Positions 3,079 through 58,265 of a stretch of 64,000 nt of DNA are shown piece by piece (the first letter of the stretch is position 1; every line of letters starts with the position of its first letter). Source of the DNA: Hemiscyllium ocellatum (taxonomy: Eukaryota). The notes under the pieces were generated by a model. The model had not been told where the DNA came from and did not search any database. It saw only the letters and a program-made list of their open reading frames with translations. Made by a program: the position numbers and the translations under genes. Where the stretch lies: NCBI RefSeq assembly GCF_020745735.1, contig NC_083435.1:45942498-46006497 (forward strand). The letters are read 5' to 3'.

Positions 3079-3387
3079 CGTGGCAGTCTAGGTGTACCAC
3101 TTCTTTCGAGCTCGGGTGTCTGAATCGGCAAGCATTGATTTCATGAAGTTAACAGTTCTGTTTCAATGAGTGCACCCGAGTAGGCAGCATTACCCAGCTC
3201 TTGTGGGTCACCATGAGAAACAGCTCTCCGATGGGAAGGCCGCTGCCCTTTCAGCTTCAGGCCTCCTTTTCAGCCGTTGCTGTGTGTCTGTGTGTTGTTG
3301 ATACATGCGCTGCTGTGTTTGGTCTGTCTTTGTGAGGACGAGCATGGACTTTGCCAAGGTAAAGCTGTTCTCTGTCTATTTAAACAG

Positions 3388-3576
3388 ACCCTGGTTCACA
3401 TGTACTCGGAGATGACCCACTCGGTGGGAGCAGCCCAGAAAGTGTTTGAGTATATGGATCGGAAGTCCAGTGTTCCCACGGACGGGAAGCTGGTAAAGGA
3501 GACTCTGAAAGGACATGTAGAATTCCAGAATGTATCCTTCTCTTACCCAACCAGACCTGACGTTCAGTCCTTAAAG
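3388..3576 (+). CDS. TAP2: TAP2-type transporter exon, 189 nt, end of the transmembrane domain into the NBD (TLVHMYSEMTHSVGAAQKVFEYMDR...YPTRPDVQSLK)
   Basis: Acceptor tttaaacag|, donor |gtaaga, phase 0/0. The peptide resembles recalled human TAP2 TLVYIYGDMLSNVGAAEKVFSYMDR more than ABCB9. Earlier exons lie upstream of the window. Confidence 0.9.
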
Positions 3577-3924
3577 GTAAGATTATAATCGAATCATCTC
3601 CTCTATCCTCTGAGATCAGGCATTGTAATGTTACAGTGGATCCCAGAGTAATCCTGGATTAGGCGTTGAGGGTAATTTTGCAGGCGATCTCACTGAGATC
3701 TGAATCCAATACTAAGACAATGATGTCAGTGAGAGCAGAATCATTTTGGGACAGAAGGAGAGATTTGCTCCATCGTTATGGGACAGATTTGTTCCATTGT
3801 GCCTGTACTGATTCTGTAACTATAATGTGTACTATTGGAGTAGGTCTCAGTTACATCATCGGTCAGGTACGGAGCATATTATTGCAGTGGATTACAGTGA
3901 GATCTTAGATCAGGGACCGAAGAC

Positions 3925-6240
3925 CTTAAGACAAAGGAGCAGATATTAGGCCATTCAGCCCAGTCAGCCTGCTCCACCATTCAGTCATGACTGAACCCCA
4001 TTCTCCTGCTTTCTCCCCAAAACCCTTGATCCCTTTGATTCTCAAGAACCTATCTATCTCTGTCTTAAATACATCCAATGACCTGGCCTCTGCAGTCTTC
4101 TGTGGCAATGAATTCCATAGACTCACCACTCTCTGGCTCAAGAAGTTTCTCCTTTTCTCCTTATCTCCATTCTAAAAGGTCTTTTCTCTAAGATAGTGCC
4201 CTCGGGGCTTAGTCTGTCCTATCAATGGGGACACTTTCCCAACACCTACTCTGTCCAGGCCATTCAATATTCCGTATGTTTCAATTAGATACCCCCTCAT
4301 CCTTCTCAACTCCATCGAATATAGGCCCTCAGTCCTCAAATGTTCCTCATCTGTTAAGCTTTTCAGTCCTGGGACCCTTCTCATGAACCTCCTCTGAACA
4401 CGCTCCAGGGCCAGTCCATCCTTCCTGAGATATGGGGCCCAAAACCACGCACAATACTCCAAATGTGGTCTGACCAGAGCCTCAGAAGTACTATCCCTGC
4501 TTATATATTCAAGTCCTTTCAAAATAAATGCCATCATTGTATTTGCCTTCCTAACTACCGACTCAACCTGCCTGGTAATCCCTGAGAGAATCTGACATTA
4601 TGATTCAGTGGATTTCTGGGAAATCTTAGATTAGCCAATGATGACCATCGATATAGGAGCTAGAGTAGGCTATCTGGCCCATTGAGTCTGCTCTGCCATT
4701 CAATAAGGCCATGGCGGATCCGCTAATCCTCAACTCCACTTTGTTCCCAGTAACTTTGGAATTCCTTCCTGATCGAAAATTTGCCATTCTCGGTGCCCGA
4801 TAATCATCTTGAGTGAGTCCATACCCAATCAGTTTAACATCCCCTTTTATGACGGTCTCTCCATATCTGGGATCAGCTGAGTGAACCTTCTCTGGACTGC
4901 CTCTGATTATCTTTCCTTGGTTACCCTTCCCAGTATTCCAGCTGTAGTCTGACTTATGTCTTATACAGTTTTAGCGACACCTCCCTATTTATATACCCCA
5001 CTCCCTTTGAAATAAAGGTCAGTGTTCTGTTTGTTTTCCCTATGATCTATTGACTTGGACACTCCTTTTGTGTAATTTATGGACAAGGACGTCCAAATCC
5101 CTCTTTCTGCAGTCTTTCTCCATTTAAATAATATTCAATTCCTTTATTCTTGCCAAAGTGTATAACATCACATTTCCCAGTATTGTGGCTATCTCCAGTC
5201 ATTTTTACTGCAGAGAGACAGACAGACTGACAGCTTGACATCGTCAAATGGTCATGACTGCCCTAACCAGTCAGCCCCTTATGCCTGTCCTTCCTTTCTA
5301 TAAAACCATGTCCAATCAGTCCTGGGCCTCATCTCTCTCTTGCCGCCTCTGCATAGCTGTCAACTCTGACATTAAGTAATATATCTATACAAATAATCCT
5401 CTTAAATTAAATCCTCTTAAACTTACAACGAGCCATCCTTACAACTCTTCAGGGTAGGGAAGTTCATACATTCTTTACCCTCTGAGAGCAAAATTTCCTT
5501 TCCATATCAGTCTTCAATGAGTGTGCTCTTTTCCCTAATTTGAGACTCTCCCATGAGTGGAAGAGTCTCAACATCCCCCCTGTCAAACCCCTCAGAATCA
5601 GCCTTTCAATAAAATCACCAACTTTCTTCTAAACTCTAATGAACAAAGACCTAATCTAGTTAGCAATTCTTCAGAAGTCAAGAATCACCTCGTGGGCTTC
5701 ATTTGAACTGTTCCCAATCCCAGTCATTCCTTTGTAAATACCGGATCAGAAGTGTTCCCAGTACTCCAGGTATGGCTTCACCAATATTGTGTGTAGTTGT
5801 AAGAAGACCCTTCTGTTTCTAACCTCGCCAGTCACAAAGCCCTAAATTCCATGTACTTTCTTCATTACTTGCTACACTTACATGCTAACTTGTCTTTCAT
5901 AAGAACACCCACATGCACTTTTTTTTGGAGTCTCGCTCCATTTAAAAATGATCCTTCCATTAAAGTACATGACCTCGCACTTTCCTACATTAAACCCATC
6001 TGTCCAGTTTTATCCCACTGTCTCCACCTATCTGTATTCACTTGCAGATTCCTTATGGTCCTCAGCACAAAGTGCCTTCATCTTATTTGCATCATCAGAA
6101 ACTGGCTCCCCTTCGTTATTCCCCCACCCCCTAACTGTTCACAACAATGTTCATGGAAAAGCTTCCAATAGTATGCCTTTCTCCCACATCCAAACTAACT
6201 TCTGTTTGAAAAAGAGTTCATTTGATTACCCATTCTTGAA
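3925..6240 (-). mobile_element. Cluster of degraded CR1 3' fragments
   Basis: Minus-strand ORF with [17 protein letters not shown] (4172-4537) and further decayed copies. Boundaries approximate. Confidence 0.75.
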
Positions 6241-7071
6241 TTGAAAAGTGAGTTTATTAGTTAGTGAAACCTAAAAAAACGTAGAAATGTAACACAGGCA
6301 CACAAAGTGAGTCCAAATATAAAGATAAAAGTGAGTAGATATATGGATTAGTCTCTGGGCAGTTGGGAAAGAGTGAAAGGGTAATAGTGAATGTAGCAGC
6401 CATTACATTGGGTGATAAAGTAGGGCCGATATTGGTAGTTGAGCAGTCAATTTTGAGATTCTTCTCTTTGCAATTTAACTGAAATTCTTTTGTCCTGTTT
6501 CCTTTCAGCAGTGAATAGCTTTCAGCAAAGTGAGGACTAGTCTTTATTTTTACCTGAAGTGCAAGGGTGTCTAGTAGCTGTCCTCAAGCTGTGACCTTCA
6601 CAGAATGCCAGTCCACATGATCTCATGTTGCTTTACAGATTAGGGACTGTACTCCGTGTATGTTTGTGGAAGGGTAAACCATAGAAATGTGGGCAAGAGA
6701 TGGCTTTCTCCTAAGGCAGTTTAGAAATGTAGGGGTGGAGATCCAGCCACTTATTAACTCTTCTTCTTCACTCTCTCTGTTAGACATGTCTGTGATATCC
6801 GTCAGTTGTAATTATCCATGGGTTCACACAGGTATATACCTGGGGGCCAGTGAATATACATCCACAACCATGTTCTGCCTGTGTGTCCTCTAGTAAAAAA
6901 AAAGACTTGTTGGAATTTATTAGTTCAATGTGACCATTAGTAATTTGGCTTCTGAGCCATGGTACAGTTGAACCTGCCTTCTCTGTTCTTTCCCACTGAC
7001 AGACCCGGATGTGTGGGTCCTGCCTTGCACTGTACTGACCTGCTCCTTCTCCCTGTCCTGTTCCTTTCCAG

Positions 7072-7245
7072 AACGTCTCCTTTGAGCTGAAGTGTGGTGA
7101 GATCACGGCCCTGGTGGGACCCTCCGGAGGGGGTAAGACGACGTGTGTGAACCTACTCGAGAGGTTTTATCGACCTCAGTCCGGACAGATCCTGCTGGAT
7201 GGCAGACCCATTGAGGAATATGAACATAAATATTACCACAACAAG
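7072..7245 (+). CDS. TAP2: TAP2 exon, 174 nt, Walker A (NVSFELKCGEITALVGPSGGGKTTCVNLLERFY...YYHNK)
   Basis: Polypyrimidine tract plus ttccag| acceptor, |gtgagg donor, open frame with GxxGxGKT. Not in the ORF track because it has no start codon. Confidence 0.93.
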
Positions 7246-8913
7246 GTGAGGGGCAGCTGTCCCCCTGTCCCTGGGGATAGAGTGAGTGAGTGAGTGGCTC
7301 ATATAACCCCCAGGGTCAGGGAGAAAATTCTGTAATGAATAAGGAGGTGCAGAGTGGCAATAGCACAAGCAAACTGGGCACATAATACTCCAGGGATTGG
7401 CATTCATTCTATTGCCCTGTACTCACTCACTCTCTGCAAATGCTGCATCTCAGCTCCCAGCTTTCTGTCCTTCAGGAGGAGGCCTTTCAGCCTGTTCACC
7501 ACAAAATAGCTTACATCTGATCCGCGCCTTCTCTAAATCTACCCAATTTGGTTCCATTTCCCTTGGCACGACTGACAAACAAAAAGCTCCAACCTTAGTC
7601 TTTATATTTGAACTAACTTCCATCCTGAGCCACCTTTTGGGACAGGGAAAAGCATCTACATTTGGATTGAAATGTGCCCATTGCCCATCACCCTGTGATC
7701 GTTGACCAACCCGAGTGGCCAATGTAAGTTATCCCCATCTCTTTGAGCAAGACCATTGCTGACTGTGGACTGACCACCCTCCCTCTCACCTCCCTCTGTC
7801 AGATTATCCCTGCTATAATGGGAAGAAACTGTTGTTTTTCCTCACTTGTGCCCAAAACCTGTCGACCCACCCTCCTGGGCTGTTCCTCCATGAATCTTTG
7901 GCTTGTTCACCTTGATAGAGTAATTCAGATGAACTGTGAGTTGTCTGATTGCTATGTTGGCTGTGAGAAAACTCAGGGCTCCTTGCTGAAGGAAATCAGG
8001 GGAGTTAACCTGACAAGCATTTACCCTCCAACCTGCACTCCCACTACATAAGGCAAGCATTTATTGTTATCGAGCTCTCCAGCACATCTACACTGGTCAA
8101 AAATAACCACCTAACTCATCCCATTTTCCAGCACTTGGCCCGTTGCCTTGTATGCCTTGGTGTCACAAGTGCCCACCTTGTTTAATGGGATGAGGGTTTC
8201 TGTGTCTATCGCCCTGACAGGCAGTGAGTTCTAGGCTCCCTCAAAGTAAAACAGTTTCCCTTCAAAGTGCCCTCTAAACTTTCCAGCCTGTACCTTAAAT
8301 CTGTGTTTCTGGTCATTGACCTCTCCACCAAGAGGAAGTTTCTTCCTCTCTATCCTATCTGTGCTCCTGAAAATTGTACAAATCTCAGTCAAATCCCCTC
8401 TGCTTTAGGAAAACAACCCCAGTATGTCCCATCTCTCTCGGTACTGAAACTCTACAGCCCAACTTCCTGGTAAATCTCCAGTGTTATAATGAGGATTCCA
8501 GAACAGCACACAATACTCTCGCTATGACCTCCCCAATGTTTTATACGGTTCCAGCATCATCTCCCTGCACTTAAAGCCAATACCTCAGTTAATAAAGGTA
8601 AGTCTATCACTTTACCAACTGCCTCAGTGGGGGATGTGCACATCAATTTCCATCTGTCCATCCCAAATTACACACAATATCGGTGTGTACCATAGTGACT
8701 ACACTCAGTATGTCCTTCTCGAGATGTGTGATGCTTTGAGCTGTGTTGAATGATGTTCCTTCATTGCCCACTCTCAGTCTGTTGGTGAGTACTGAGTACA
8801 GGTCTCACTATCCTGCCTGGTCCTCTCTCACCGACAGCATTTTACAACCACACTGGGGTCTGTCTCTGTCTGCTGGTGATTCTGAACAAAACTCTTGTGT
8901 TTTTGCTCCTCAG

Positions 8914-9073
8914 TTGGGTGTCGTGGGACAGGAGCCTGTGCTGTTTGCACTTTCTGTCAGGGACAATATCTGCTATGGCCTCCAGAACGTTCCGATGTCA
9001 TCGGTCACTGCAGCAGCTCAGAAAGCCAATGCCCATGAATTCATCGAGGGACTGGAGCGTGGCTACAGCACAG
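8914..9073 (+). CDS. TAP2: TAP2 exon, 160 nt, Q-loop (LGVVGQEPVLFALSVRDNICYGL...GLERGYST)
   Basis: ctcctcag| acceptor, |gtatca donor, ends in phase 1 matching the next exon. Confidence 0.93.
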
Positions 9074-9395
9074 GTATCATCAGAAACAACACTCTAAACC
9101 CAGCAAGACTGGCAGTGAGGGCAGGATGATCGGGACGGACAGTCAGGGACTTGGATGGAGTGTGACAGTGAGGGACTCTGTTATCGAGGGCAACTGACTA
9201 TCTGGGCTTTGTGTGTTTGGGAGTTACTCCCACTGATCTCTGTGGAGGGCTACACCAGTGGGGAGCTCACCTCCGTCTCCGAGAGAAGCCACATGAGGAG
9301 CTGCTCAGGTCACTGAGCTGCCCCCACTGTATGGAGAAGGGGAAAGGGATCAATACGATGTGACCATCACTGAAATATTCCACTCTCCCATTCAG

Positions 9396-9532
9396 ATGTC
9401 GGAGAGACGGGAGGACAGCTTTCTGGTGGAGAGAAACAGAGAATAGCCATTGCTCGAGCTCTCATCCGACAACCTCAAATCCTCATCCTTGACGAAGCAA
9501 CCAGCTCCCTCGATGTGGAGAGTGAGCACACG
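9396..9532 (+). CDS. TAP2: TAP2 exon, 137 nt, signature and Walker B ([46 protein letters not shown])
   Basis: cccattcag| acceptor, |gtgagg donor, phase 1 in and phase 0 out, ABC motifs intact. Confidence 0.94.
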
Positions 9533-9649
9533 GTGAGGGAGCAGCCTCAGGGTTCACAGAAACTCTTATTACAGAGCGTTATTACACTGTGTTAGGGTGT
9601 AGATTGGTAGGGTTTATTACCGGTGTAACAGATTTCTCACAGTGACAGA

Positions 9650-12600
9650 ATTGTTATTCTGCAAAAGGAGTCCATTCAGTGCATTTTGCCTGCACTGACT
9701 CTGAGAATATGAATTTTGGTCTAACCTCCAGCCATTTCCCTGTACATCCTGTGTATTTATGTAACCGTTCAATTCCCTTTTGAATACCTGAGTTGAATCT
9801 ACCTTCCCCATATTTCCCAGATGCTGGGTGGGAAGCATCCTGCACCTTGCATTCGCTTCACCTGCAAAACACTTCAAATCTGGGCCTTTGGCTCTCAATC
9901 CAATTATGAGCAGCAGCACTTTCTTACTTGTGTACTTTTTCAGACACTTCATGATTTAAAAACTTCTCTTTCATCTCCACTTAGCTCTCTCTTCCTCTCG
10001 GAGATCAGTCAAATTTTCCCCACTCTCTCTTAAAAGCTAAAAATCACACAACACCAGGTTATAGTCCAACAGGTTTAATTGGAAGCACTAGCTTTCGGAG
10101 CGACGCTCCTTCATCAGGTGGTTGTGGAGTTTAACATCATAAGACTCAGATTCTGTGTCTCACAATCTTATTCTCCACAACCACCTGATGAAGGAGCGTC
10201 TCTCCGAAAGCTAGTGTGCTTCCAATTAAACCTGTTGGACTATAACCTGGTGTTGTGTGATTTTTAACTTTGTACACCCCAGTCCAACACCGGCATCTCC
10301 ATATCATCTAAAGTGTCTCATCTCTGGACCCATTCTTGCAAATCACTTCTGCACTCTCTCTTATACTTTGACCTACTTCCTATAAAATGGTGCCCACAGC
10401 TGTCCACAATACTCCAGCCGAGGCTGAAACAAGTATGCAGTGTAAGTTCATCAGAAACCCTCTGGTCTTATAATCACTGCCTTAATGAATGAAGCCTGGA
10501 GTACTCTATGATTTATTAATAGCTCTCTCCCTCACACTTTTCATGACTTGTGTATGTTTGCCTGTAGGAACCCCTGCTCCTGTACAACATTCAGAATCAT
10601 ACTCTTTATTTTATACTCTTTTCATTTTCTTTGTACTAAAGTCCATCAGCTCCAAGTTTTTCCACATTGAACCCTAAATGCCCCCGCTTGCCCAGCCCAC
10701 TGTTTGTCAATGTCCTTTTGGATTTCCACACTGATCCCTCATACTTTACGATTCTTCTAAGTTTTGCATCATCTGCAAATATGGACGTTGTTCCCAGCAG
10801 ACCAAGTTCCAGATTATTTGTACATAACAGGAAAAGCAAGGGTCTCCTACTGACCCCGAGAGATCTGCACTACAAATCCTCTACTCTCTGCAGAAAACAC
10901 CCATTTATCATCATCCTACTATCTTATCCAAGACTGAGTCTATCTTGTATCCATGTTGCTGCTGTCCTTTTTAAATCTCAACCATCCATTCTATGGCACT
11001 CTCTCTCCCACACCTCTTGGAAATCCAGATAAACCACAGCAACAGCATAACCCTCATTAAGCCCTTTCTGTTACCTTTTCAAAGAACTACAGCAAGTTCG
11101 TGAGATACATTTTTCCCGTAAGATATTCATACTGCCTCTTCCAAATCATTAATATTTTACCATGTGACTATTAAACTTCCCCGAAATAGTTTTCTTTGAC
11201 GTTTCCTTGCCAATGAGAGTATACTGAATGGGCTGTGATTTCTCAGCCTCTCTGTACAATCTCTTTGAACATGGCTATAAATTTTGCAATTGTCCAGTCC
11301 TCTGGCAATCCTCGACCACTTCAAATCCTGGGAGGATTGCAATATTGTGGCTTATGCCTCTGCATTTTCCACGTTCGCTTCCTCTATATCCTTGGATGCA
11401 TCTCCTCTGGCCCTGATTTAAGTACAAACAGTTTATCCAATGCTGCATCTTTATCAATTTAAAAGTCTTCTAACTGACTGGGTTTACTCCTCTGTCACAA
11501 TTTCCTTCTGAATATTCAAGGCTGAGACAGACGGGTATTTCCTCATTGAGGGAATCAAGGGTGAGGGGGAAAAGGCAGGAAAGTGATGTTGAGGATGATC
11601 AGATCAGTCATGATCTCACTCGATGGGCTGAATGGCCTGACATGTGGTCTTGTGACCCAGGCAGCACCTACATTGTAGGGAAAGACAGATGCAAAGTATC
11701 CCATGAACCCCTCTGAGTTGCCTCTTACCTTCATGTGTACACCCCCTTTTTGATGTCTGATCAGCCCTCTTCCCCTGTTTCCCACCTCTTACTGTTCATG
11801 TCCATATTGGAGACTTGGGCATTGTCCCTTGATGTTAGCTGTCAGCCTTCTCCCATAATTTCTCTTTGTTTCACTTATTTCCTCACCTTCCCACCCAAAC
11901 CTTCAATATTCCTCCTCACTCTCAATTGTATTCTCTGTCTGACACCTGTCGAAAGCAGACTTTCTCTACATTATCGAAATGTCTATCTCCTGGCCATCCA
12001 TGGAGCTCTCGGTTTGATGGTCCCACCTTTCCTTTTTGAGGGAATATACCTTGACTGTACCTGGACCATCCCCTTCCCGTTGTTCAGCTGCTGTTTTTCC
12101 CACCAACCTTTAGTTCCAGTTGATCAGGCCAGCTCTGCTCCTGTCCCTTTAACATCCTCTCTCTGTCATTGATTATTCTTGCTCTGGATTGACCCCTGAC
12201 ATTTCCCACCGTTGTCTAGAACCGTTTGATACAATGATCACTGATCCCTAATTCCTCCTCCTTCACTTGGCCAGCCTCACTCCCAGAAGCCTGCTCTTGC
12301 AGACCCTCCTTCCTTGTTAGACTGGACACACATTGCTGCTGGAATCTCTCCTGGATACAGTCTAGGAAGACTTGTCCCTCCCTGTCCCTTATACCACACT
12401 ATCCCAGTCTGTATACAGCTAATTAAAGTCCTCCATTATAACTATTATATGATGTTTACACCTCTCTAATTCCCCTGCAGATTTGCTCCTCTTCATCCTC
12501 TCCACTTGCTGCTGTTCTACAGACTATACTGAGCAATGTGTCTAAACCTTTATATTAGATTGATTCTGCCCTTTAACCTTCTGAAATGTTCTATTTCCTC

Positions 12601-12950
12601 AGAACTACAATGGTCTCCTTAACTACAAAGCATCACCCTTGATCCCTTTTGTATTTTCCTGAATACCTTCTACTGAGGAATAGTTAACACCACCTTGCTC
12701 TCCAATGAGTCAGAACTCCGTCACCACCAACACATTGTAATTCTAATTCAAAATCTGCATCTGTACCTCCCTCACCATATTCCCTAATCTCTGTGTATTC
12801 ACCAACATGGTTTAGATTTTGACTCCGCTGAATAACTTCTTATTCTCTCATTGGTGCGAGCTGACATTTCAGGAACCCTAGTCTTCTCTGTTAGTTTCAC
12901 TTGATCCTACACTCCTGCCAAGTTAGTTTAAAACCCTCACCGTGACACTA
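9650..12950 (-). mobile_element. Degraded CR1 fragments (RT and endonuclease parts) in the last TAP2 intron
   Basis: FADDAKL at about 10760, GYFASVF at about 11700; interrupted by a palindromic insertion at 10038. Confidence 0.7.
10038..10300. mobile_element. Palindromic Penelope-derived insertion with a hammerhead motif in each arm
   Basis: About 92-bp inverted arms (10038-10129, 10173-10266) around a 43-bp spacer. Confidence 0.8.
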
Positions 12951-13017
12951 ACAAAACACCCTCAAGAAGCTCAGACCCAGGTGGAACCATTCTGGCTTGG
13001 GGCCATCTTCCCCAGAG

Positions 13018-13299
13018 CAGTGGTTAGCACTGCTGCCTCACAGCACCGGGGACCCGGGTTCGATTCCAGTCTCGGGTGACTGTGTGGAGTTTGCACATTC
13101 TCCCCGTGTCTGTGTGGGGTTTCCTGCGGGTGCTCCGGTTTCCTCCCACAATCCAGGGCTGTGCCAGTCAGCTGAATTGGCCATGCTAAACTGCTAATAT
13201 TGTTAGGTGCATTAGTCAGAGGGAATTGGGTCTGGGTGGGTGTGGACTGGTTGGGCCGAAGGGCCTGTTTCCACACTGTGGGGAATCTAATCTAATCTA
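13018..13299 (+). mobile_element. HE1-type tRNA-derived SINE
   Basis: TGGTTAGCACTGCTGCCTCACAGC head, GGTTCGATTCC B box, CR1-derived tail ending (ATCTA)n. Confidence 0.88.
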
Positions 13300-13943
13300 G
13301 AAATCTCCTGCTCCTGCAGTATCGTTCCAGCTATGGTGACACTTCCTGCACACGGGCTTGCATGTGACATTGGAAATGACCCTGACTGCCCACTGACACA
13401 CTTGGCTGAGCTGTTCTACACTTCTAACCTGAAACTTTTAAATCTATTTCCTCCTCTAATTTACTTTAGCCTCAGTCTCATAATATTAACAATACAATGC
13501 CATACAATAAATTGCTTCTCTCCCCTATGCTTATAAACTCTCACTTTCCCTGTGCTAGTTTACACATTTATATTTTCTAAATTATTGGAGTTGAAATACA
13601 GTCCCCAACATCAACTGGTCAACAACCAATAAACTTGCAAATGTCCTGCGATCACCTTGATCCTCCAGCTTAGCTCCGGGTAGGTGTTCCAGGGCAGGTC
13701 TGCCTCCTCTCACCCTGGAAAGGAAGGGTGTTGATTGGTTGGGTTTCTTACTGATGTCATGACGGTTTCCCACAGTCTAATAGAGGAGATGGTGATGGGG
13801 ACATGGGCAGCACTGTCAGATTTACACCTCCAGATCCCCCAGCCCAAAGAGGTTCCTGCATTAGGCGACACTGACTCTATGTGCCTGATGTTAATTCTCT
13901 CTCTCTCACTCTCTTTGTCTCACTCTCTCTCTGTCTCTCCCAG

Positions 13944-14159
13944 ATCCAGCAGGCATTATCGAAGGACACGGGACAAACCATCCTGGTCATTGCCCACCGT
14001 CTGAAGACTGTGGAGAAGGCTGACAAGATCATTGTGATTGAGAGAGGGATGGTGGTGGAGGAGGGAAAGCACCAGGAATTAATGGAGAGAAAAGGCTGCT
14101 ATTTCCACCTGCTCCAGAGACTGACTTCTAACGGGGAGCAGAGCGTGACTGAGTTTTAA
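13944..14159 (+). CDS. TAP2: TAP2 terminal coding exon (IQQALSKDTGQTILVIAHRLKTVEKAD...QSVTEF*)
   Basis: (CT)n tract plus cccag| acceptor, H-loop IAHRL, stop TAA at 14157-14159. Confidence 0.93.
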   Translation: MQQALSKDTGQTILVIAHRLKTVEKADKIIVIERGMVVEEGKHQELMERKGCYFHLLQRLTSNGEQSVTEF

Positions 14160-34343: not shown

Positions 34344-35886
34344 TGTACATCTCTATGACTCTAATTATTTAAAGGAAGCAAAGGAATTTCTTCTCCCAGA
34401 CAGTAGTGAACAGCTGGAATTCTGAGAGTTGTGGAAGTTAGATGACTGAAGTACTGAAAGGATTAGATTTACAACATATTGAGACATTGAAGTACAGTGC
34501 AGGCTGTAAATCTTCTCCCATCCACACTATTTAGGTCTCAGTTAGCTACCCCCTTCATCCTTCTATACCCCATTGACAACAGACCCAGAGTCTTCAACCA
34601 CTCCAACTATGGAAAACCCTTTATGGCTGGGATCATTCTTGTCAGCCTCCTCTGGACCCCATCCCATGCCAGCACATCCTTCCTTCGATACAGGGCCCAA
34701 AACTATTCTCAATATTCTAAATGCGATCTGACCAGACCCTTGCAGCCTCAGCAGTCAAGCTCTGCTGTTGTTTTCTAGCCCTCTTGAAATGAACACTAAC
34801 ATTGCATTTGCCTTCCTAACCACCAGCTGAATCTGCTTGATAACCTTAAGAGAATTTTGAATTAGACTCCCAAGTCCCTTTTTGTTCAGATTTCCAAAGC
34901 ATTTCTCTACTTAGAAAATCGTTTCCGCCTCTATTCTACTGACCGAAATGCATAGCCTCATACTTTGCCACATTGTATTCAATTTAATCACTCTTCTAGC
35001 CTGTCCAAGTATTTGTGCAGGCTTCCAGCTCCCTCCCAGTCCAGGGTGTAGGTTTGATAACCAGATGTTTCATTACCTGGCTAGCTTCACTTGGAGGTCG
35101 CCACTGATGATGTTACCTAGCCAGGTAATGAAACGTCTGGACATCAAACCTACAGCTCAGCGAGCAAACCTACACCCTAAACCTCAACCTGAGCTACAAA
35201 CCTTCACAAACCTTACCTCCCAGTCCCTCCACCTATATTTGCGTCATCTGCAAACTTAACAGCAATGCCCTCAGTTCCTTTGTCTGGATTGTTTATGTAT
35301 ATCATGCATTGTTGTGCAACACTGACCCCTGCAGGACTCCCCACTCTCTAACTTCTGCCAATTAACCAATCCTGTATCCATTCCAGTACCTTGTCCCTTG
35401 TCACATGGACCATTATCATGGCTGAGACCATCTTCATGGGTAGGGGACGAGGCTGACAAAGGAGCTTGTGATTTCAAATAAACCTGTTGGACTATAACCT
35501 GGTGTGGCCTGACTTCCAATGTTATCTTATTTAGCAGCCGCCTGTGAGGCACCTTATTAGAGAGAGGCAGATTGAGCAGAAAACTTTGAGAAATGTTCAG
35601 AGAGGGAATTAGGGGTTTGAATCTTTTATCGTAAAAGATAACTGAGTGTAGCATTGTTCCTGGACCCCTTGTAGATTCAGAATGGAGAAACTTTTATCTG
35701 TCCCTGTGCTTTATTTCCCCTTCCCCGCCAACCCCATGCCACTGGTGACCCTCCCAGAGAGGACACTGGCCTCAATCCTGCCCCTTTTCTCTCCCCTCCT
35801 CATTCTCCAGTGAGGAGTCCCCCTGCAAATCCCCTTTTGCCCACACGAGGGCGGCAGAACCTGGCCGTCCGCTCGAAGATTGGAAA

Positions 35887-36009
35887 CAAACCTGAAATCA
35901 AGGACTTTACCCGGCAACAGATGGCGTCACGTCACGCACAAACTCTTTAATCTGATTGGTCTATGTGCCAACTGGGACCCACCCCATTCAAGGATTTTCC
36001 AGAAATCCC
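35887..36009 (+). promoter_or_regulatory. Orphan S-X1-X2-Y module with kB/STAT-like sites
   Basis: CAAACCT 35887-93; 16 bp spacer; CCCGGCAACAGATG 35910-23; GCGTCACGTCA 35924-34; CTGATTGG 35952-59; AGGATTTTCCAGAAATCCC about 35991-36009. Local CpG cluster in non-repetitive DNA. Confidence 0.65.
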
Positions 36010-36967
36010 TGAGTTTGAGGAGAGAGGGTGGAGACTGCATTTTAACCATCCCTCAATAAGAATCAACCCACCTTGGTCTTAAACAAAACTGAAAGACTGT
36101 GCACAGGGAGAGTTGTAAAGACTCATGACCCTGTGAGAGAACAGATCTCTCCCCAGGATCAGTGACCAACTGCAGGATGGTGCAGATCTGAAACAGAAAC
36201 AGATTACTGGGGAAACTGGGCAGCTCATGTACGCTGCCAGATCTACTGAGTATTGGCCGCAATTGCTGTTTTTGTTTCAGATTTCTCCCCATCTCTGTTT
36301 GAAATACTGTCTTAGATTCGTACAGTTACATTGCACAAACACAGATCTTTTGGTCTAATTCATCCATGCTGACCAGTCTTCCCAATGTGACCTCATCCCA
36401 TTTGCTGGCACTTGGCCCATATCCCCCGAACCCTTCCTGCTCATGTATCCATCCAGATGCTTTTTAAATGCTGTAATTGTACCAGCCTCCACCACTTCCT
36501 CTGGCAGCTCATTCCATACACGCACCACCCTCTGTGTGAAAAAAATTGCCGATTAGGTCCCTTGTAAATCTTTCCCCTCTCACCTTAAACCTATGCTCAC
36601 GAGTTCTAGATTCCCCCACCCCGGTGAAAAGACCTTGTCTGTTTATCCTATCAATGCCCTTCATTTTATAAACCTCTGTGAGGTCTCCTCTCAGCCTCTA
36701 ACACGCCAGGGAAAATAACCCCAGCCTATTCAGCCTGTCCCTAAAACTCAAATTCTCAAATTCTGGTGACTCCTTGTAAATCTTTTTAAAGCTCTTTCAA
36801 GTTTAACAACATCCTTCCTACAGCAGGGAGACCAGAACTGAACACAGTATTCCAAAGGTGGCCTAACCAATATCCTGTACAGCTGCAACATAACCTCCTA
36901 ATTCCTGTACTCAATGTACTGACCAATAAAGGTAAGCATACCAAATGCCGCCTTCACTATCCTGCCC

Positions 36968-39781: not shown

Positions 39782-40149
39782 TGCTACTCCATCAATCTTA
39801 GTGTCATCTGCAAACTTGCTAATCAGACCACCTCTACCTTCTTCCAGACCATTTATCTGAAATTTGTACTTCCAAATAAACCTGTTGGACTATAATATGA
39901 TGTAGTGTGATTTTAAACTAAATATACCTTGATGCATGACACTGAGAGAATGGGGGCGTTGGGAATCAGTCTCTGTACCTGTGAGTGCGATCCTCCTCAA
40001 TCTCCCTCTCTCTCTCTCTCTCCCTTTCTCCAAGAGAGGACACAGGGAGATGGGACTGAGGGGAGAGCTCTCTCACAGACTACACTGTTAAACACTCCAC
40101 ATTTTGGAATCAGCTATATTGGACTTTGACCCTGTGTACTGTCTCCGTC

Positions 40150-40277
40150 CACTTTCAGTTTCTCAGTCTGGTTCAATCTGGTTTTCCCCTGGCAGTTACT
40201 GTGCTCCCTGCCCCTCCCTGGTGTTTGTCTCAGTTGGAAAGTCCCTGACGTAAGTGTGAAGCTGTTGATCAAATTGG
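40150..40277. promoter_or_regulatory. ISRE, NF-kB, CRE and CCAAT cluster
   Basis: CACTTTCAGTTTCTC 40150-64; GGAAAGTCCC 40236-45 (reverse complement of GGGACTTTCC); TGACGTAA 40246-53; ATTGG 40273-77. Confidence 0.62.
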
Positions 40278-56482: not shown

Positions 56483-56769
56483 GACTCTGGTTTCCAGCAT
56501 CTGCAGTCATTGTTTTTACCCAGAGATAGATACAGTGTTTTTACACCCAGGATTACAGCTATCAATCACTGTCTCCCTCAGGAGACTGGGCACATTGGGG
56601 CAGAGGGAGAGTGGAAGACGGAGTGGGATTAATTTTTAGTGGGTTAGGGTCTGAGGGGAATCAGGATAAAGATGGGAAAATGGGTCTTATACTGAGCAGC
56701 CAGGATCAGCTGGAAAGGTGCAGCAGGGCCTGAGGGGCTGAATGACCTCCCCCTGTTCTGTATCAAATC

Positions 56770-56990
56770 ACTTTCAGTTTCTCCTTTGATTCTCAAACCT
56801 GCCTCTGTTTATTCTCCCTGGTAACTGGTGATGTATATTTACTGCATTTGTCTGATTGGATGGTTCTCTATACTTTTCAAGTTTATTTCGAGACAAACTC
56901 AACCTGCCCAGGAGTGTTCTACCCGGAGACTGCTGACCTAGAGGCTGTTCCTATTCTCATTGGCCCAGTGGGTGAGCAGTGTCCAATCAG
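56770..56990 (+). promoter_or_regulatory. MHC-type promoter: ISRE, S box, X1, Y box, plus paired CCAAT boxes
   Basis: ACTTTCAGTTTC 56770-81; AAACCT 56795-800; 16 bp spacer; CCTGGTAACTGGTG 56817-30; CTGATTGG 56852-59; ATTGG 56959-63; CCAATCAG 56983-90. The ATG is about 155 bp further on. Confidence 0.78.
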
Positions 56991-57144
56991 TGAGGAGGAT
57001 TTGATGTTAATTTCACCAGCTCTGGGTCAGAGCACAGACAGACAGGGGCAGAGCAGGAGACTGGCAGCATCTGTCCAGTTCCAAGATCAACTCTTCCAAA
57101 AGTAGTGACTACAGACTGTTCTTCAACCTCGGAGACGGAAGATA

Positions 57145-57196
57145 ATGATGATGAGACTCATACTTCTCGCCCTCCTGTGTGGAGGGGCATCTGCAG
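57145..57196 (+). CDS. Signal-peptide exon 1 of a probable MHC class I heavy chain (MMMRLILLALLCGGASA-G)
   Basis: Hydrophobic leader ending A-S-A, then a phase-1 donor cag|gtgggt. Resembles recalled shark class I leaders of the ...LLxLLxGGVSAG type. Lies behind an ISRE-SXY promoter and next to TAP2. No exon 2 in the window, so identity is inferred. Confidence 0.72.
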
Positions 57197-58265
57197 GTGG
57201 GTAATGGGCATAGAGGGGTCTCAGTAACAGTCTGGGTATTGGAGCATTAACACTTGGTCAGTGGGTAATGGGCACAGAGAGGGTCTCAGTGTCAGGCTGT
57301 GTACTGACCATTAATCCCAGGTCAGTGGGGTCAGAAAGGGTCTTAGTGCTGGAGTGGGGAAAGAAACAGACCATAAACTGGTTGGGGGTAAGTTGACACT
57401 GGGATCAGGGGCTGGTGAGAGAGACTGGGAGACTGTGTGGGTGACTGAGGGACAGAGTGATGAGGCTGGAGGGAGAGCGATGGTGTGTGGGTGAGGGGCT
57501 CAGGGTGATGAGACAGTAGAAAGAGAGTTGACGTTAGGGTCTGAGAATGAGTGTGTTGAGGGTGGAGAGAGGGGTCAACAAAGGTTCGTTCCCTCCAGTC
57601 AGTCCCACCAATCTCCTATTAGATCAGAGCTGGTCTGTTGCTCAATCCCAAGCTTTGCTAGGTCTCCTGATTTGTTCAATATATCATTTCAGCTGCATGA
57701 CACTGTAACCTTTTGCTATAAATTCTGTGTCTTCTGACCCTGCTACACAACTACCCGATGAAGAAGCAGCGCTCTGAAAGCTAAGTCTGTTGGACTATAA
57801 CCTGGTGTTGTGTGATTTTAACAGTGTCCACCCCTGTCTTACACCGACTCCTCCACATTATAGCGAGGGAGCAGCAGTCACAGGCTGATCACCGATCATT
57901 GCCCAGAAATACCAACTGCTTTTCTATCTACACCGACAAACAAAGCTACTGGGGATTTCCAGCACTTTCAATTTAGATTCAGATTTCCAAAATCCGCAGG
58001 TTTTTTTTTTGTAAAAGCCTATATCGTTCTGTACCAAAAACTGCAATTATCCCCCAGTATCTACAGCTTTGTGAGGAGAATGTGTGAGAATCTGTTTCCT
58101 GGTTTCCCTCCTGAACACTCGAGGGTTAATGTTCAGATTATGTCACTGGTTCTGTCTGCTCCCAGCAGGGGGAGCAGTTCCTCTGGATCTGAAACCTGTG
58201 TTGAAAGTTCCTCACAGGATTGTTATAAAGTCTAACATTGAGCAATGTGAGAAGATGTTCAGACA

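What the first reader, a model, noticed from the sequence alone, without database searches (positions are those of the whole stretch)
35887..36009. Orphan SXY enhanceosome module between TAP2 and class I, with no gene attached
Seen: the same CAAACCT S box and 16-bp S-X spacing as the class I promoter at 56794; X1 CCCGGCAACAGATG, close to recalled HLA-DRA CCTAGCAACAGATG; a doubled CGTCA X2; a perfect Y box 42 bp from the X start (35 bp in the class I promoter); then overlapping kB-like and STAT-like sites. No coding exon follows. Known: SXY binds RFX5, CREB and NF-Y and recruits NLRC5 or CIITA; distal S-Y modules act as enhancers in mammalian MHC class II. Inference: a distal MHC enhancer in a cartilaginous fish, or the promoter of a lost or non-coding gene.
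Basis: partly seen in the sequence, partly recalled or inferred. Interest (0 to 1): 0.72.

Follow-up and report, generated by a model that had tools for sequence, protein, structure and literature searches.

The report
Shark MHC SXY module, one of ten
The motif cluster is real and is one of at least ten related copies of an MHC-type "SXY" control element found only in the 0.8 Mb that holds this fish's antigen-processing and class I genes, so it is most likely a regulatory element rather than a chance match or a repeat, but whether it works as an enhancer, a hidden promoter or a fading relic is untested.

Summary
Observation confirmed. All the boxes are present at 35887-36008.

The module is not a unique orphan. 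Whole-genome DNA and pattern searches find 10 paralogous copies, called m1 to m10 here. All lie on one chromosome between 45.70 and 46.48 Mb, interspersed with two proteasome (PSMB) genes, a TAP-type ABC transporter gene, the class Ia gene and a class Ia-like gene. No copy lies elsewhere in 3.98 Gb.

Evidence for constraint:
- S-X1 spacing is 16 nt in all ten copies.
- X1-Y spacing is 36-37 nt in eight copies.
- The S-to-Y core keeps 74% mean pairwise identity, while the flanks fall to 26-46%.

The window copy (m8) and its 92%-identical twin (m10) each sit 14-21 kb upstream of a class I leader exon, inside one duplicated block.

m8 is among the more derived copies:
- a 5-bp CGTCA duplication gives the 42-nt X-Y spacing;
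- it has four changes in the S-X spacer;
- it has lost the canonical STAT site that four other copies keep.

I saw no coding exon directly after m8 or m10 (about 20 kb and 14 kb examined), nor in the few kb I could read after the other copies.

Best reading is a distal RFX/CREB/NF-Y platform for class Ia-region genes (about 45%). Rivals are an unannotated promoter and a decaying relic. The scan also noted the m10 copy independently (s1-203584).

The parts
35658..35846 (+). Upstream part of the repeated unit, alignable in 6-7 of the 10 copies. It includes a conserved CTGCAGATCC-like stretch.
   Evidence: Pairwise blastn limits; family alignment.
35847..35857 (+). Conserved GC box, GAGGGCGGCAG (family consensus GGGGGCGGCAGAGGCTG). 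It looks like an Sp1/KLF site and loosely like a CTCF site.
   Evidence: GGGCGG is conserved in 9 of 10 copies. The factor assignments are my inference.
35887..35894 (+). S box CAAACCTG.
   Evidence: ACCTG is present in all 10 copies and in the class I promoter.
35895..35909 (+). S-X spacer. Counted from CAAACCT it is 16 nt in all 10 copies, and its sequence is nearly invariant in the family. This copy carries 4 private substitutions here.
35910..35923 (+). X1 box CCCGGCAACAGATG, an RFX-type site.
   Evidence: It matches 12 of 14 positions of the DRA X box probe quoted in PMC4806502.
35922..35934 (+). X2 / CRE, TGGCGTCA plus a duplicated CGTCA. The 5-bp tandem duplication is shared only with m10.
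   Evidence: The other copies have a single (T)GACGTCA.
35952..35959 (+). Y box CTGATTGG (inverted CCAAT, an NF-Y-type site), 42 nt from the X1 start.
   Evidence: ATTGG is present in all 10 copies. The spacing is 36-37 nt in the 8 copies without the duplication.
35992..36008 (+). Near-palindromic GGATTTTCCAGAAATCC (kB-like / STAT-like). It is conserved in m1, m2, m7, m8 and m10, and weakly in m4.
   Evidence: The canonical GAS (TTCCCGGAA, TTCCGGGAA or TTCCCAGAA) that lies just upstream in m1, m2, m4 and m7 is degraded here (ATTCAAGGA).
36112..36300 (.). Block that is 97-100% identical in m7, m8 and m10, even though their SXY cores differ by about 27% between m7 and m8. It contains a 19-bp-stem hairpin with arms at 36183-36202 and 36266-36284. 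The 36233-36286 part resembles a dispersed repeat.
   Evidence: Its relation to the module is unexplained.
40140..40245 (+). Possible decayed copy of the class I proximal promoter: ISRE 15-mer, weak S, X and Y. It lies 4.2 kb downstream and is partly present after m10 too.
   Evidence: BLAST alone does not link it to the promoter at 56769, so this is tentative.
56769..56859 (+). Proximal class Ia promoter module (ISRE, S, X1, Y). The leader exon ATG follows at about 57146. This is the likeliest target of the distal module.

Best explanation
The stretch is a genuine SXY-type cis-regulatory module: GC box, S, X1, X2/CRE and Y, followed by a kB/STAT-like palindrome. It is copy m8 of a family of at least 10 paralogous modules that exists only in the MHC class Ia region of this genome.

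I think it most likely works as a distal platform. An RFX complex would bind X1, CREB/ATF would bind X2 and NF-Y would bind Y. That complex would recruit an NLR transactivator (NLRC5 or CIITA) and loop to the class Ia promoter 21 kb downstream, and perhaps to the neighbouring TAP and PSMB genes. The ten copies together would give the region coordinated, interferon-linked expression.

Shown here:
- the motifs and their spacing;
- the family, its restriction to this region, and the conservation of the core against decayed flanks;
- the shared synteny of m8 and m10 with a class I gene.

Inferred, not shown:
- factor binding and enhancer activity;
- the target genes.

This copy is derived: it has a 5-bp duplication that shifts X-Y by half a helical turn, changes in the spacer, and has lost the canonical GAS. 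It may therefore be weaker than its relatives.
For: - Motifs read directly from the sequence.
- Low copy number and strict localisation: every full-module match is on C113 at 45.696-46.475 Mb. A relaxed X1-Y scan of 194 kb of local sequence returns only family members and the class I promoter.
- Constraint: S-X1 is 16 nt in 10 of 10 copies and X1-Y is 36-37 nt in 8 of 10. Mean pairwise identity is 0.74 in the S-to-Y core against 0.26-0.46 in the flanks. The limits of homology vary from copy to copy.
- The S-X distance of 16 bp, and an X-Y gap of about 22-23 bp after a 14-nt X1, are close to the 16 bp and 20-22 bp reported for NLRC5-occupied mouse modules, where spacing is critical (PMC4374748).
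- The window block 35666-59879 is collinear with the block upstream of the class Ia-like gene: module, then the 40001-40162 segment, then the leader exon.
- That paralogous gene has no proximal SXY within about 500 bp upstream of its 5' UTR; a repeat-like sequence (recognised by eye) sits there instead. No copy of the proximal promoter was found in the 26-kb block, so m10 is the only SXY found near it.
- There is a local CpG peak on the module (observed/expected 0.62-0.68, with 0-0.2 beside it).
- Distal S-Y enhancers and X-box-like sequences are known in the human class II region (references 36 and 37 cited in PMC2278383).
Against: - There is no functional, chromatin or expression evidence.
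- Two small runs of the same species, guessed to be RNA, hold none of 35995-36178.
- In mouse T cells NLRC5 was found essentially only at promoters (PMC4374748).
- This copy is the second most diverged from the family consensus.
- Its X-Y spacing is off by 5 bp. By my recollection of the class II literature, a half-turn shift can abolish function.
- Core conservation may be partly inflated because the alignment was anchored on X1.
- Whether RFX5, RFXAP, NLRC5 or CIITA exist in this genome was not tested.
- Genes next to m1-m7 and m9 were only partly inspected.
Confidence: 0.45

Rival explanations
1. It is a promoter, not an enhancer. A transcript starts about 60-100 bp after the Y box, has a short, mostly non-coding first exon, and splices to distant exons. 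It could be an alternative upstream first exon of the class Ia gene or an unannotated non-coding RNA.
For: - The orientation S to X to Y points towards the class I gene in both m8 and m10.
- NF-Y boxes usually sit 60-80 bp from a start site (general knowledge).
- A donor-like CT|GTGAGAG lies at about 36141. It is identical in m7, m8 and m10, and a similar one follows m1.
- In mammals SXY modules bound by NLRC5 are promoter-proximal (PMC4374748).
Against: - No ATG-led exon or Pfam domain follows this module or its twin m10 in the 14-20 kb examined, nor the other modules in the 1.5-10 kb I could inspect.
- m3 and m4 face each other about 130 bp apart, and m7 and m9 point into the 3' ends of neighbouring genes. 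This is odd for promoters.
- No RNA run holds the putative exon, though the two candidate runs are tiny.
- Splice-like motifs are common by chance.
Confidence: 0.25
2. This copy is a decaying relic: the leftover upstream region of a former class I gene unit that is no longer used. The family as a whole may be functional, or may once have been.
For: - m8 is the second most diverged copy. It has 4 private changes in an otherwise near-invariant spacer, a 5-bp duplication in X2 and a lost canonical GAS.
- A possible decayed class I-type proximal promoter lies 4.2 kb downstream with no exon after it.
- About 10 kb of LINE insertions now separate the module from the working promoter (scan notes s1-207208 and s1-207236, not checked by me).
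- Identity between m8 and m10 in the core (93%) is no higher than in class I intron 1 (89-97%).
Against: - All four boxes are still intact.
- The S-X spacing is unchanged.
- The same derived duplication is retained in m10, so it is old and has been tolerated in two copies.
- CpG-containing motifs have survived in a CpG-depleted setting.
Confidence: 0.22
3. It is a chance cluster of short motifs, or part of a transposable element that happens to carry them.
For: - The surrounding region is rich in transposons.
- 36233-36286 and 36300-36963 next to the module are dispersed repeats.
Against: - The module itself has no copy outside the 0.8-Mb class Ia region.
- Copies have variable limits of homology rather than fixed ends.
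- Five of seven genome-wide pattern hits falling within 0.02% of the genome cannot be chance.
Confidence: 0.04

Closest known systems
SXY (W/S-X1-X2-Y) enhanceosome module of MHC class I, class II, B2M and related promoters
   Same: - Same four boxes in the same order.
- X1-X2 is almost the human DRA X box (12 of 14 positions in X1, and the CRE directly abuts it).
- The Y box is CTGATTGG.
- S-X spacing is 16 nt, as in mouse NLRC5 modules.
- The family X-Y gap is close to 20-22 nt (PMC4374748; PMC4806502 for the probe sequence).
   Different: - It is not next to a visible first exon of an MHC gene.
- This copy's X-Y distance is 5 nt longer.
- The X1-X2 sequence is class II-like, although the neighbours are class I-pathway genes.
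- A conserved GC box lies upstream and a kB/STAT-like palindrome downstream.
- Factor binding is untested.
Distal S-Y enhancers and X-box-like (XL) sequences of the human MHC class II region (Krawczyk 2004; Gomez 2005, as cited in PMC2278383)
   Same: Intergenic SXY-like modules lie kilobases from promoters, inside the MHC. In humans they are bound by RFX and CIITA and act at a distance.
   Different: - Here they lie in the class Ia region (antigen processing plus class I), not the class II region.
- There are at least 10 copies that are clear paralogs of one another.
- Activity is unknown.
The proximal class Ia promoter of this same genome (window 56769-56859)
   Same: Same S box, same S-to-GGYAAC distance, same Y box, similar X1-Y distance (35-36 against 36-37 nt).
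   Different: - The promoter has an ISRE directly before S, a different X1 (CCCTGGTAAC) and no clear CRE.
- It is CpG-poor and is followed by CCAAT boxes and the leader exon.
- Outside the boxes the two are barely alignable.

Membership tests
SXY enhanceosome module | S, X1, X2 and Y boxes in that order on one strand | tested here: met
   all 10 copies.
SXY enhanceosome module | Constrained S-X spacing (16 bp in NLRC5-occupied mouse modules, PMC4374748) | tested here: met
   16 nt in 10 of 10 copies.
SXY enhanceosome module | Constrained X-Y spacing (20-22 bp gap; helical phasing) | tested here: inconclusive
   The family norm is 36-37 nt from the X1 start, a gap of about 22-23 nt. This copy and m10 have 42 nt because of a 5-bp duplication. 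The functional tolerance is unknown.
SXY enhanceosome module | Lies just upstream of the transcription start of an MHC or antigen-presentation gene | tested here: not met
   The nearest class I leader exon is 21 kb downstream. Only transposon ORFs lie between.
SXY enhanceosome module | Occupied by RFX5/RFXAP/RFXANK, CREB/ATF and NF-Y, and recruits NLRC5 or CIITA | not testable with these tools
   This needs ChIP or reporter assays.
Distal MHC S-Y enhancer | SXY-like module at a distance from promoters but inside the MHC, kept by selection | tested here: met
   Location. Core against flank conservation and invariant spacing among 10 paralogs.
Distal MHC S-Y enhancer | Enhancer activity and looping to target promoters | not testable with these tools
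   This needs ATAC or H3K27ac data, 4C or Hi-C, and deletion or reporter tests.
Promoter of a transcribed gene | Transcript starting downstream of the Y box | tested here: inconclusive
   No run on record as RNA holds the stretch. Two small runs guessed to be RNA hold none of 35995-36178.
Transposable element or dispersed repeat | Many copies spread over the genome, with fixed ends | tested here: not met
   There are 10 copies, all within 0.78 Mb of one chromosome. The limits of homology vary.

The most novel reading that the evidence does not exclude
The class Ia region of this cartilaginous fish may be wired by a set of at least ten class II-like SXY sites placed between, not at, the promoters of the TAP, PSMB and class I genes. 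That would be region-wide co-regulation of antigen processing and presentation by one RFX/NF-Y/NLR-transactivator system. It could be close to the ancestral state from which the separate NLRC5 (class I) and CIITA (class II) promoter modules of bony vertebrates descend.
Probability: 0.3. Interest if true: 0.8.

Novelty: new variant of a known kind. Interest (0 to 1): 0.6.

Why it matters
How the tightly linked antigen-processing and class I genes of early jawed vertebrates are switched on together is not known. SXY modules have been studied almost only in mammals, and there mainly at promoters.

A conserved family of intergenic SXY modules confined to a shark's class Ia region would give concrete, testable sites for asking two questions. 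Did the RFX/NF-Y/NLR enhanceosome already control the whole region about 450 million years ago? Did the class I and class II types of module share an origin?

If this copy proves inert, it still marks the old 5' region of a class I gene unit and helps date the duplication of the two class I genes.

Tried and rejected
- **Read evidence.** After it, the whole window sequence, which contains them, served as the subject of local BLAST runs in my own scripts.\n- **RNA runs.** None is on record as RNA. Two small guessed-RNA runs hold nothing of the putative first exon. This is not evidence of silence.\n- **Rfam.** Nothing at gathering threshold, and only a chance-level miRNA hit (E = 0.42) at the relaxed threshold.\n- **Class I exon relics.** None next to the modules.\n- **TAP-like exons.** None in the fetched loci.\n- **Pfam on the 79-aa minus-strand ORF over 36056-36292.** No hit.\n- **Mapping all neighbouring genes.** The C1-set search was swamped by immunoglobulin clusters. 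MHC_II_beta found nothing, and its own control also failed. A search by genus is not possible for this genome.\n- **Repeat origin of the conserved 36112-36232 block.** Only 36233-36286 is repeat-like.\n- **Cross-species conservation.** Could not be tested with the collections offered.\n- **Literature.** I found no paper describing shark SXY modules.

Full report
**What is there**

At window 35887-36008 the sequence reads, in order:
- S box CAAACCTG (35887-35894);
- a 16-nt spacer;
- X1 CCCGGCAACAGATG (35910-35923);
- an X2/CRE, TGGCGTCA, immediately followed by a second CGTCA (35922-35934);
- Y box CTGATTGG (35952-35959);
- the near-palindrome GGATTTTCCAGAAATCC (35992-36008).

The class I promoter at 56769-56859 has the same S box, the same distance from S to the GGYAAC core, and a Y box 35-36 nt from X1. 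The observation therefore stands. Two small corrections apply. TTCCAGAA has 2-nt spacing, so it is not a canonical GAS site.

**Setting**

- The window is C113:45942498-46006497 of a 3.98-Gb assembly.
- Plus-strand ABC-transporter nucleotide-binding exons lie at 3217-14156 (Pfam ABC_tran). TAP2 against TAP1 was not tested.
- The class I leader exon is at about 57146. Its alpha1, alpha2 and alpha3 exons lie 18-26 kb further on, outside the window.
- Between the module and the class I promoter I saw only transposon ORFs.
- Proteasome-subunit exons lie at 45812713 and 45842589-45845598, plus strand.
- A second, diverged class I gene lies at 46455144-46460730, minus strand. Its amino-acid identity to the first is 55% in alpha1, 70% in alpha2 and 90% in alpha3.
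- This matches the compact class Ia region described for elasmobranchs, with extra class Ia-like genes nearby (PMC10751288).

**Not an orphan: a family of ten**

A DNA search of the whole genome found paralogs of the module only on this chromosome. Hits elsewhere were confined to a 54-nt repeat piece at 36233-36286. Further DNA and pattern searches brought the count to ten.

| Copy | Start on C113 | Strand |
|---|---|---|
| m1 | 45696108 | + |
| m2 | 45698431 | + |
| m3 | 45702098 | + |
| m4 | 45702261 | - |
| m5 | 45762757 | - |
| m6 | 45782038 | + |
| m7 | 45850524 | - |
| m8 (this one) | 45978285 | + |
| m9 | 46043376 | - |
| m10 | 46474592 | - |

- The composite S-X1-Y pattern occurs 7 times in the genome against 4 for the reversed control, and 5 of the 7 are here.
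- The exact X1X2 20-mer occurs 3 times, all here. Two of the eleven one-mismatch hits are also here, and none is in the class II region.
- A relaxed X1-Y scan of the 194 kb of local sequence I held returned only family members and the class I promoter.

**Signs of constraint**

- S-X1 spacing is 16 nt in all ten copies. X1-Y is 36-37 nt in eight copies, and 42 nt in m8 and m10.
- Mean pairwise identity is 0.74 from S to Y and 0.61 over the GC box. It is 0.26-0.46 in the 60-110 nt on either side.
- Three copies (m5, m6, m9) share nothing recognisable with the others beyond about 100 nt.
- The limits of homology differ from copy to copy, from 35658-36042 at most to 35871-35959 at least. This is what old duplicates with decayed flanks look like, not a mobile element.
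- Upstream, a GC box (GGGGGCGGCAGAGGCTG) is conserved.
- Downstream, m1, m2, m4 and m7 keep a canonical GAS (TTCCCGGAA, TTCCGGGAA or TTCCCAGAA). Most copies keep the TTTTCCAGAAATCC element.
- The module is a small CpG peak in a CpG-poor setting.
- One caveat: the alignment was anchored on X1, which favours the core somewhat.

**Fit to the known module**

In mouse, NLRC5-occupied modules have S and Y at 16 bp and 20-22 bp from the X box, and spacing is a critical determinant (PMC4374748). The family's 16 nt, and its gap of about 22-23 nt after a 14-nt X1, fit well. The X1-X2 sequence, however, is closer to the class II (DRA) type than to this genome's own class I promoter.

**This copy in particular**

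- m8 and m10 are 92% identical over the module. They head two collinear blocks: module, then the 40001-40162 segment, then the class I leader, intron 1 and the gene. The module has therefore travelled with a class I gene unit.
- The class Ia-like gene behind m10 has a repeat-like sequence (recognised by eye) directly before its 5' UTR. There is no proximal SXY or ISRE within about 500 bp, and no copy of the proximal promoter in the 26-kb block. m10 is the only SXY found near it.
- m8 is also the second most diverged copy. It carries the 5-bp CGTCA duplication shared with m10, which adds half a helical turn between X1 and Y. It has four private substitutions in the otherwise near-invariant S-X spacer. 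The canonical GAS is degraded to ATTCAAGGA.
- By my recollection of the class II promoter literature, half-turn changes between X and Y can abolish function. I did not verify this in a paper here.

**Enhancer, promoter or relic**

- No ATG-led exon or Pfam domain follows m8 or m10 in the 14-20 kb examined, nor any other module in the 1.5-10 kb I could inspect.
- m3 and m4 face each other about 130 nt apart. m7 and m9 point into the 3' ends of a PSMB gene and the class Ia gene. This is hard to square with ordinary promoters and easier with orientation-independent enhancers.
- Distal S-Y enhancers and X-box-like elements are known in the human class II region (cited in PMC2278383). NLRC5 in mouse T cells, by contrast, was seen essentially at promoters only.
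- A promoter with a short non-coding first exon cannot be excluded. A donor-like CT|GTGAGAG at about 36141 is identical in m7, m8 and m10.
- No RNA data could be brought to bear.

My estimates are distal enhancer 0.45, unannotated promoter 0.25, decaying relic (for this copy) 0.22, and chance or transposon 0.04.

**Unexplained**

The block 36112-36231 is 97-100% identical in m7, m8 and m10, and 36262-36291 is 97% identical. The SXY cores of m7 and m8, by contrast, are only about 72% alike. The block is not a dispersed repeat except for 36233-36286. It folds into a 19-bp-stem hairpin with a large loop (z = -3.6) and matches no Rfam family. Gene conversion or a constrained transcribed element are both possible.

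**Limits**

The whole window also served as subject in later local BLAST scripts.
- N runs in the class I intron were left as they are.
- The 45.71-45.94 Mb interval could not be fetched.
- Cross-species conservation, chromatin state, factor presence and expression remain untested.

Noticed in passing
window 36112-36300; also L026 (m7) and L025 (m10): A block of about 190 nt, lying 150-340 nt after the Y box, is 97-100% identical in three module copies whose SXY cores differ by about 27% (m7 against m8). It holds a 19-bp-stem hairpin. Only its 36233-36286 part is a dispersed repeat. Gene conversion or a constrained element could explain it.
   Followed up: partly
window 40140-40245: An ISRE 15-mer identical to that of the class I promoter is followed by weak S-, X- and Y-like stretches, a kB-like site and a CRE. 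It looks like a decayed copy of the class I proximal promoter, 4.2 kb after the SXY module. The segment 40001-40162 is also present (83%) after m10. BLAST alone does not link it to the promoter.
   Followed up: partly
C113:46460420-46461000 (L013), minus strand: The class Ia-like paralog keeps a leader exon region 95-96% identical to window 57018-57329. A repeat-like sequence, recognised by eye, lies directly upstream of its 5' UTR. No ISRE, S, X or Y motif lies within about 500 bp. Its alpha1 exon hit carries a TGA.
   Followed up: partly
C113:45702098-45702509 (L028/L029): Two module copies (m3 and m4) form a large palindrome. Their Y boxes face each other about 130 nt apart around a TTCnnnGAA-like centre. 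With m1 and m2 they make four modules within 6.4 kb.
   Followed up: no
C111:39699449-39699468 and C620:45660-45679: An identical X1X2-like 20-mer, CCCAGCAACTGATGCCGTCA, occurs at two places outside the MHC chromosome. It may be the X box of another antigen-presentation gene, possibly assembled twice.
   Followed up: no
L019:2100-2300 (C113, about 46018600): A run of N lies in the alpha2-alpha3 intron of the class Ia gene, inside a very long low-complexity (Pro/Ser/Leu-like) repeat stretch.
   Followed up: no
L018-L019 (C113:46007222-46017677), i.e. 725-11180 nt beyond the window's end: Class I intron 1 holds about 10 kb of a tandemly repeated unit. The class Ia-like paralog has less than 1 kb of it. 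This accounts for much of the 18-kb against 4-kb difference in intron 1 length.
   Followed up: no
   Followed up: no
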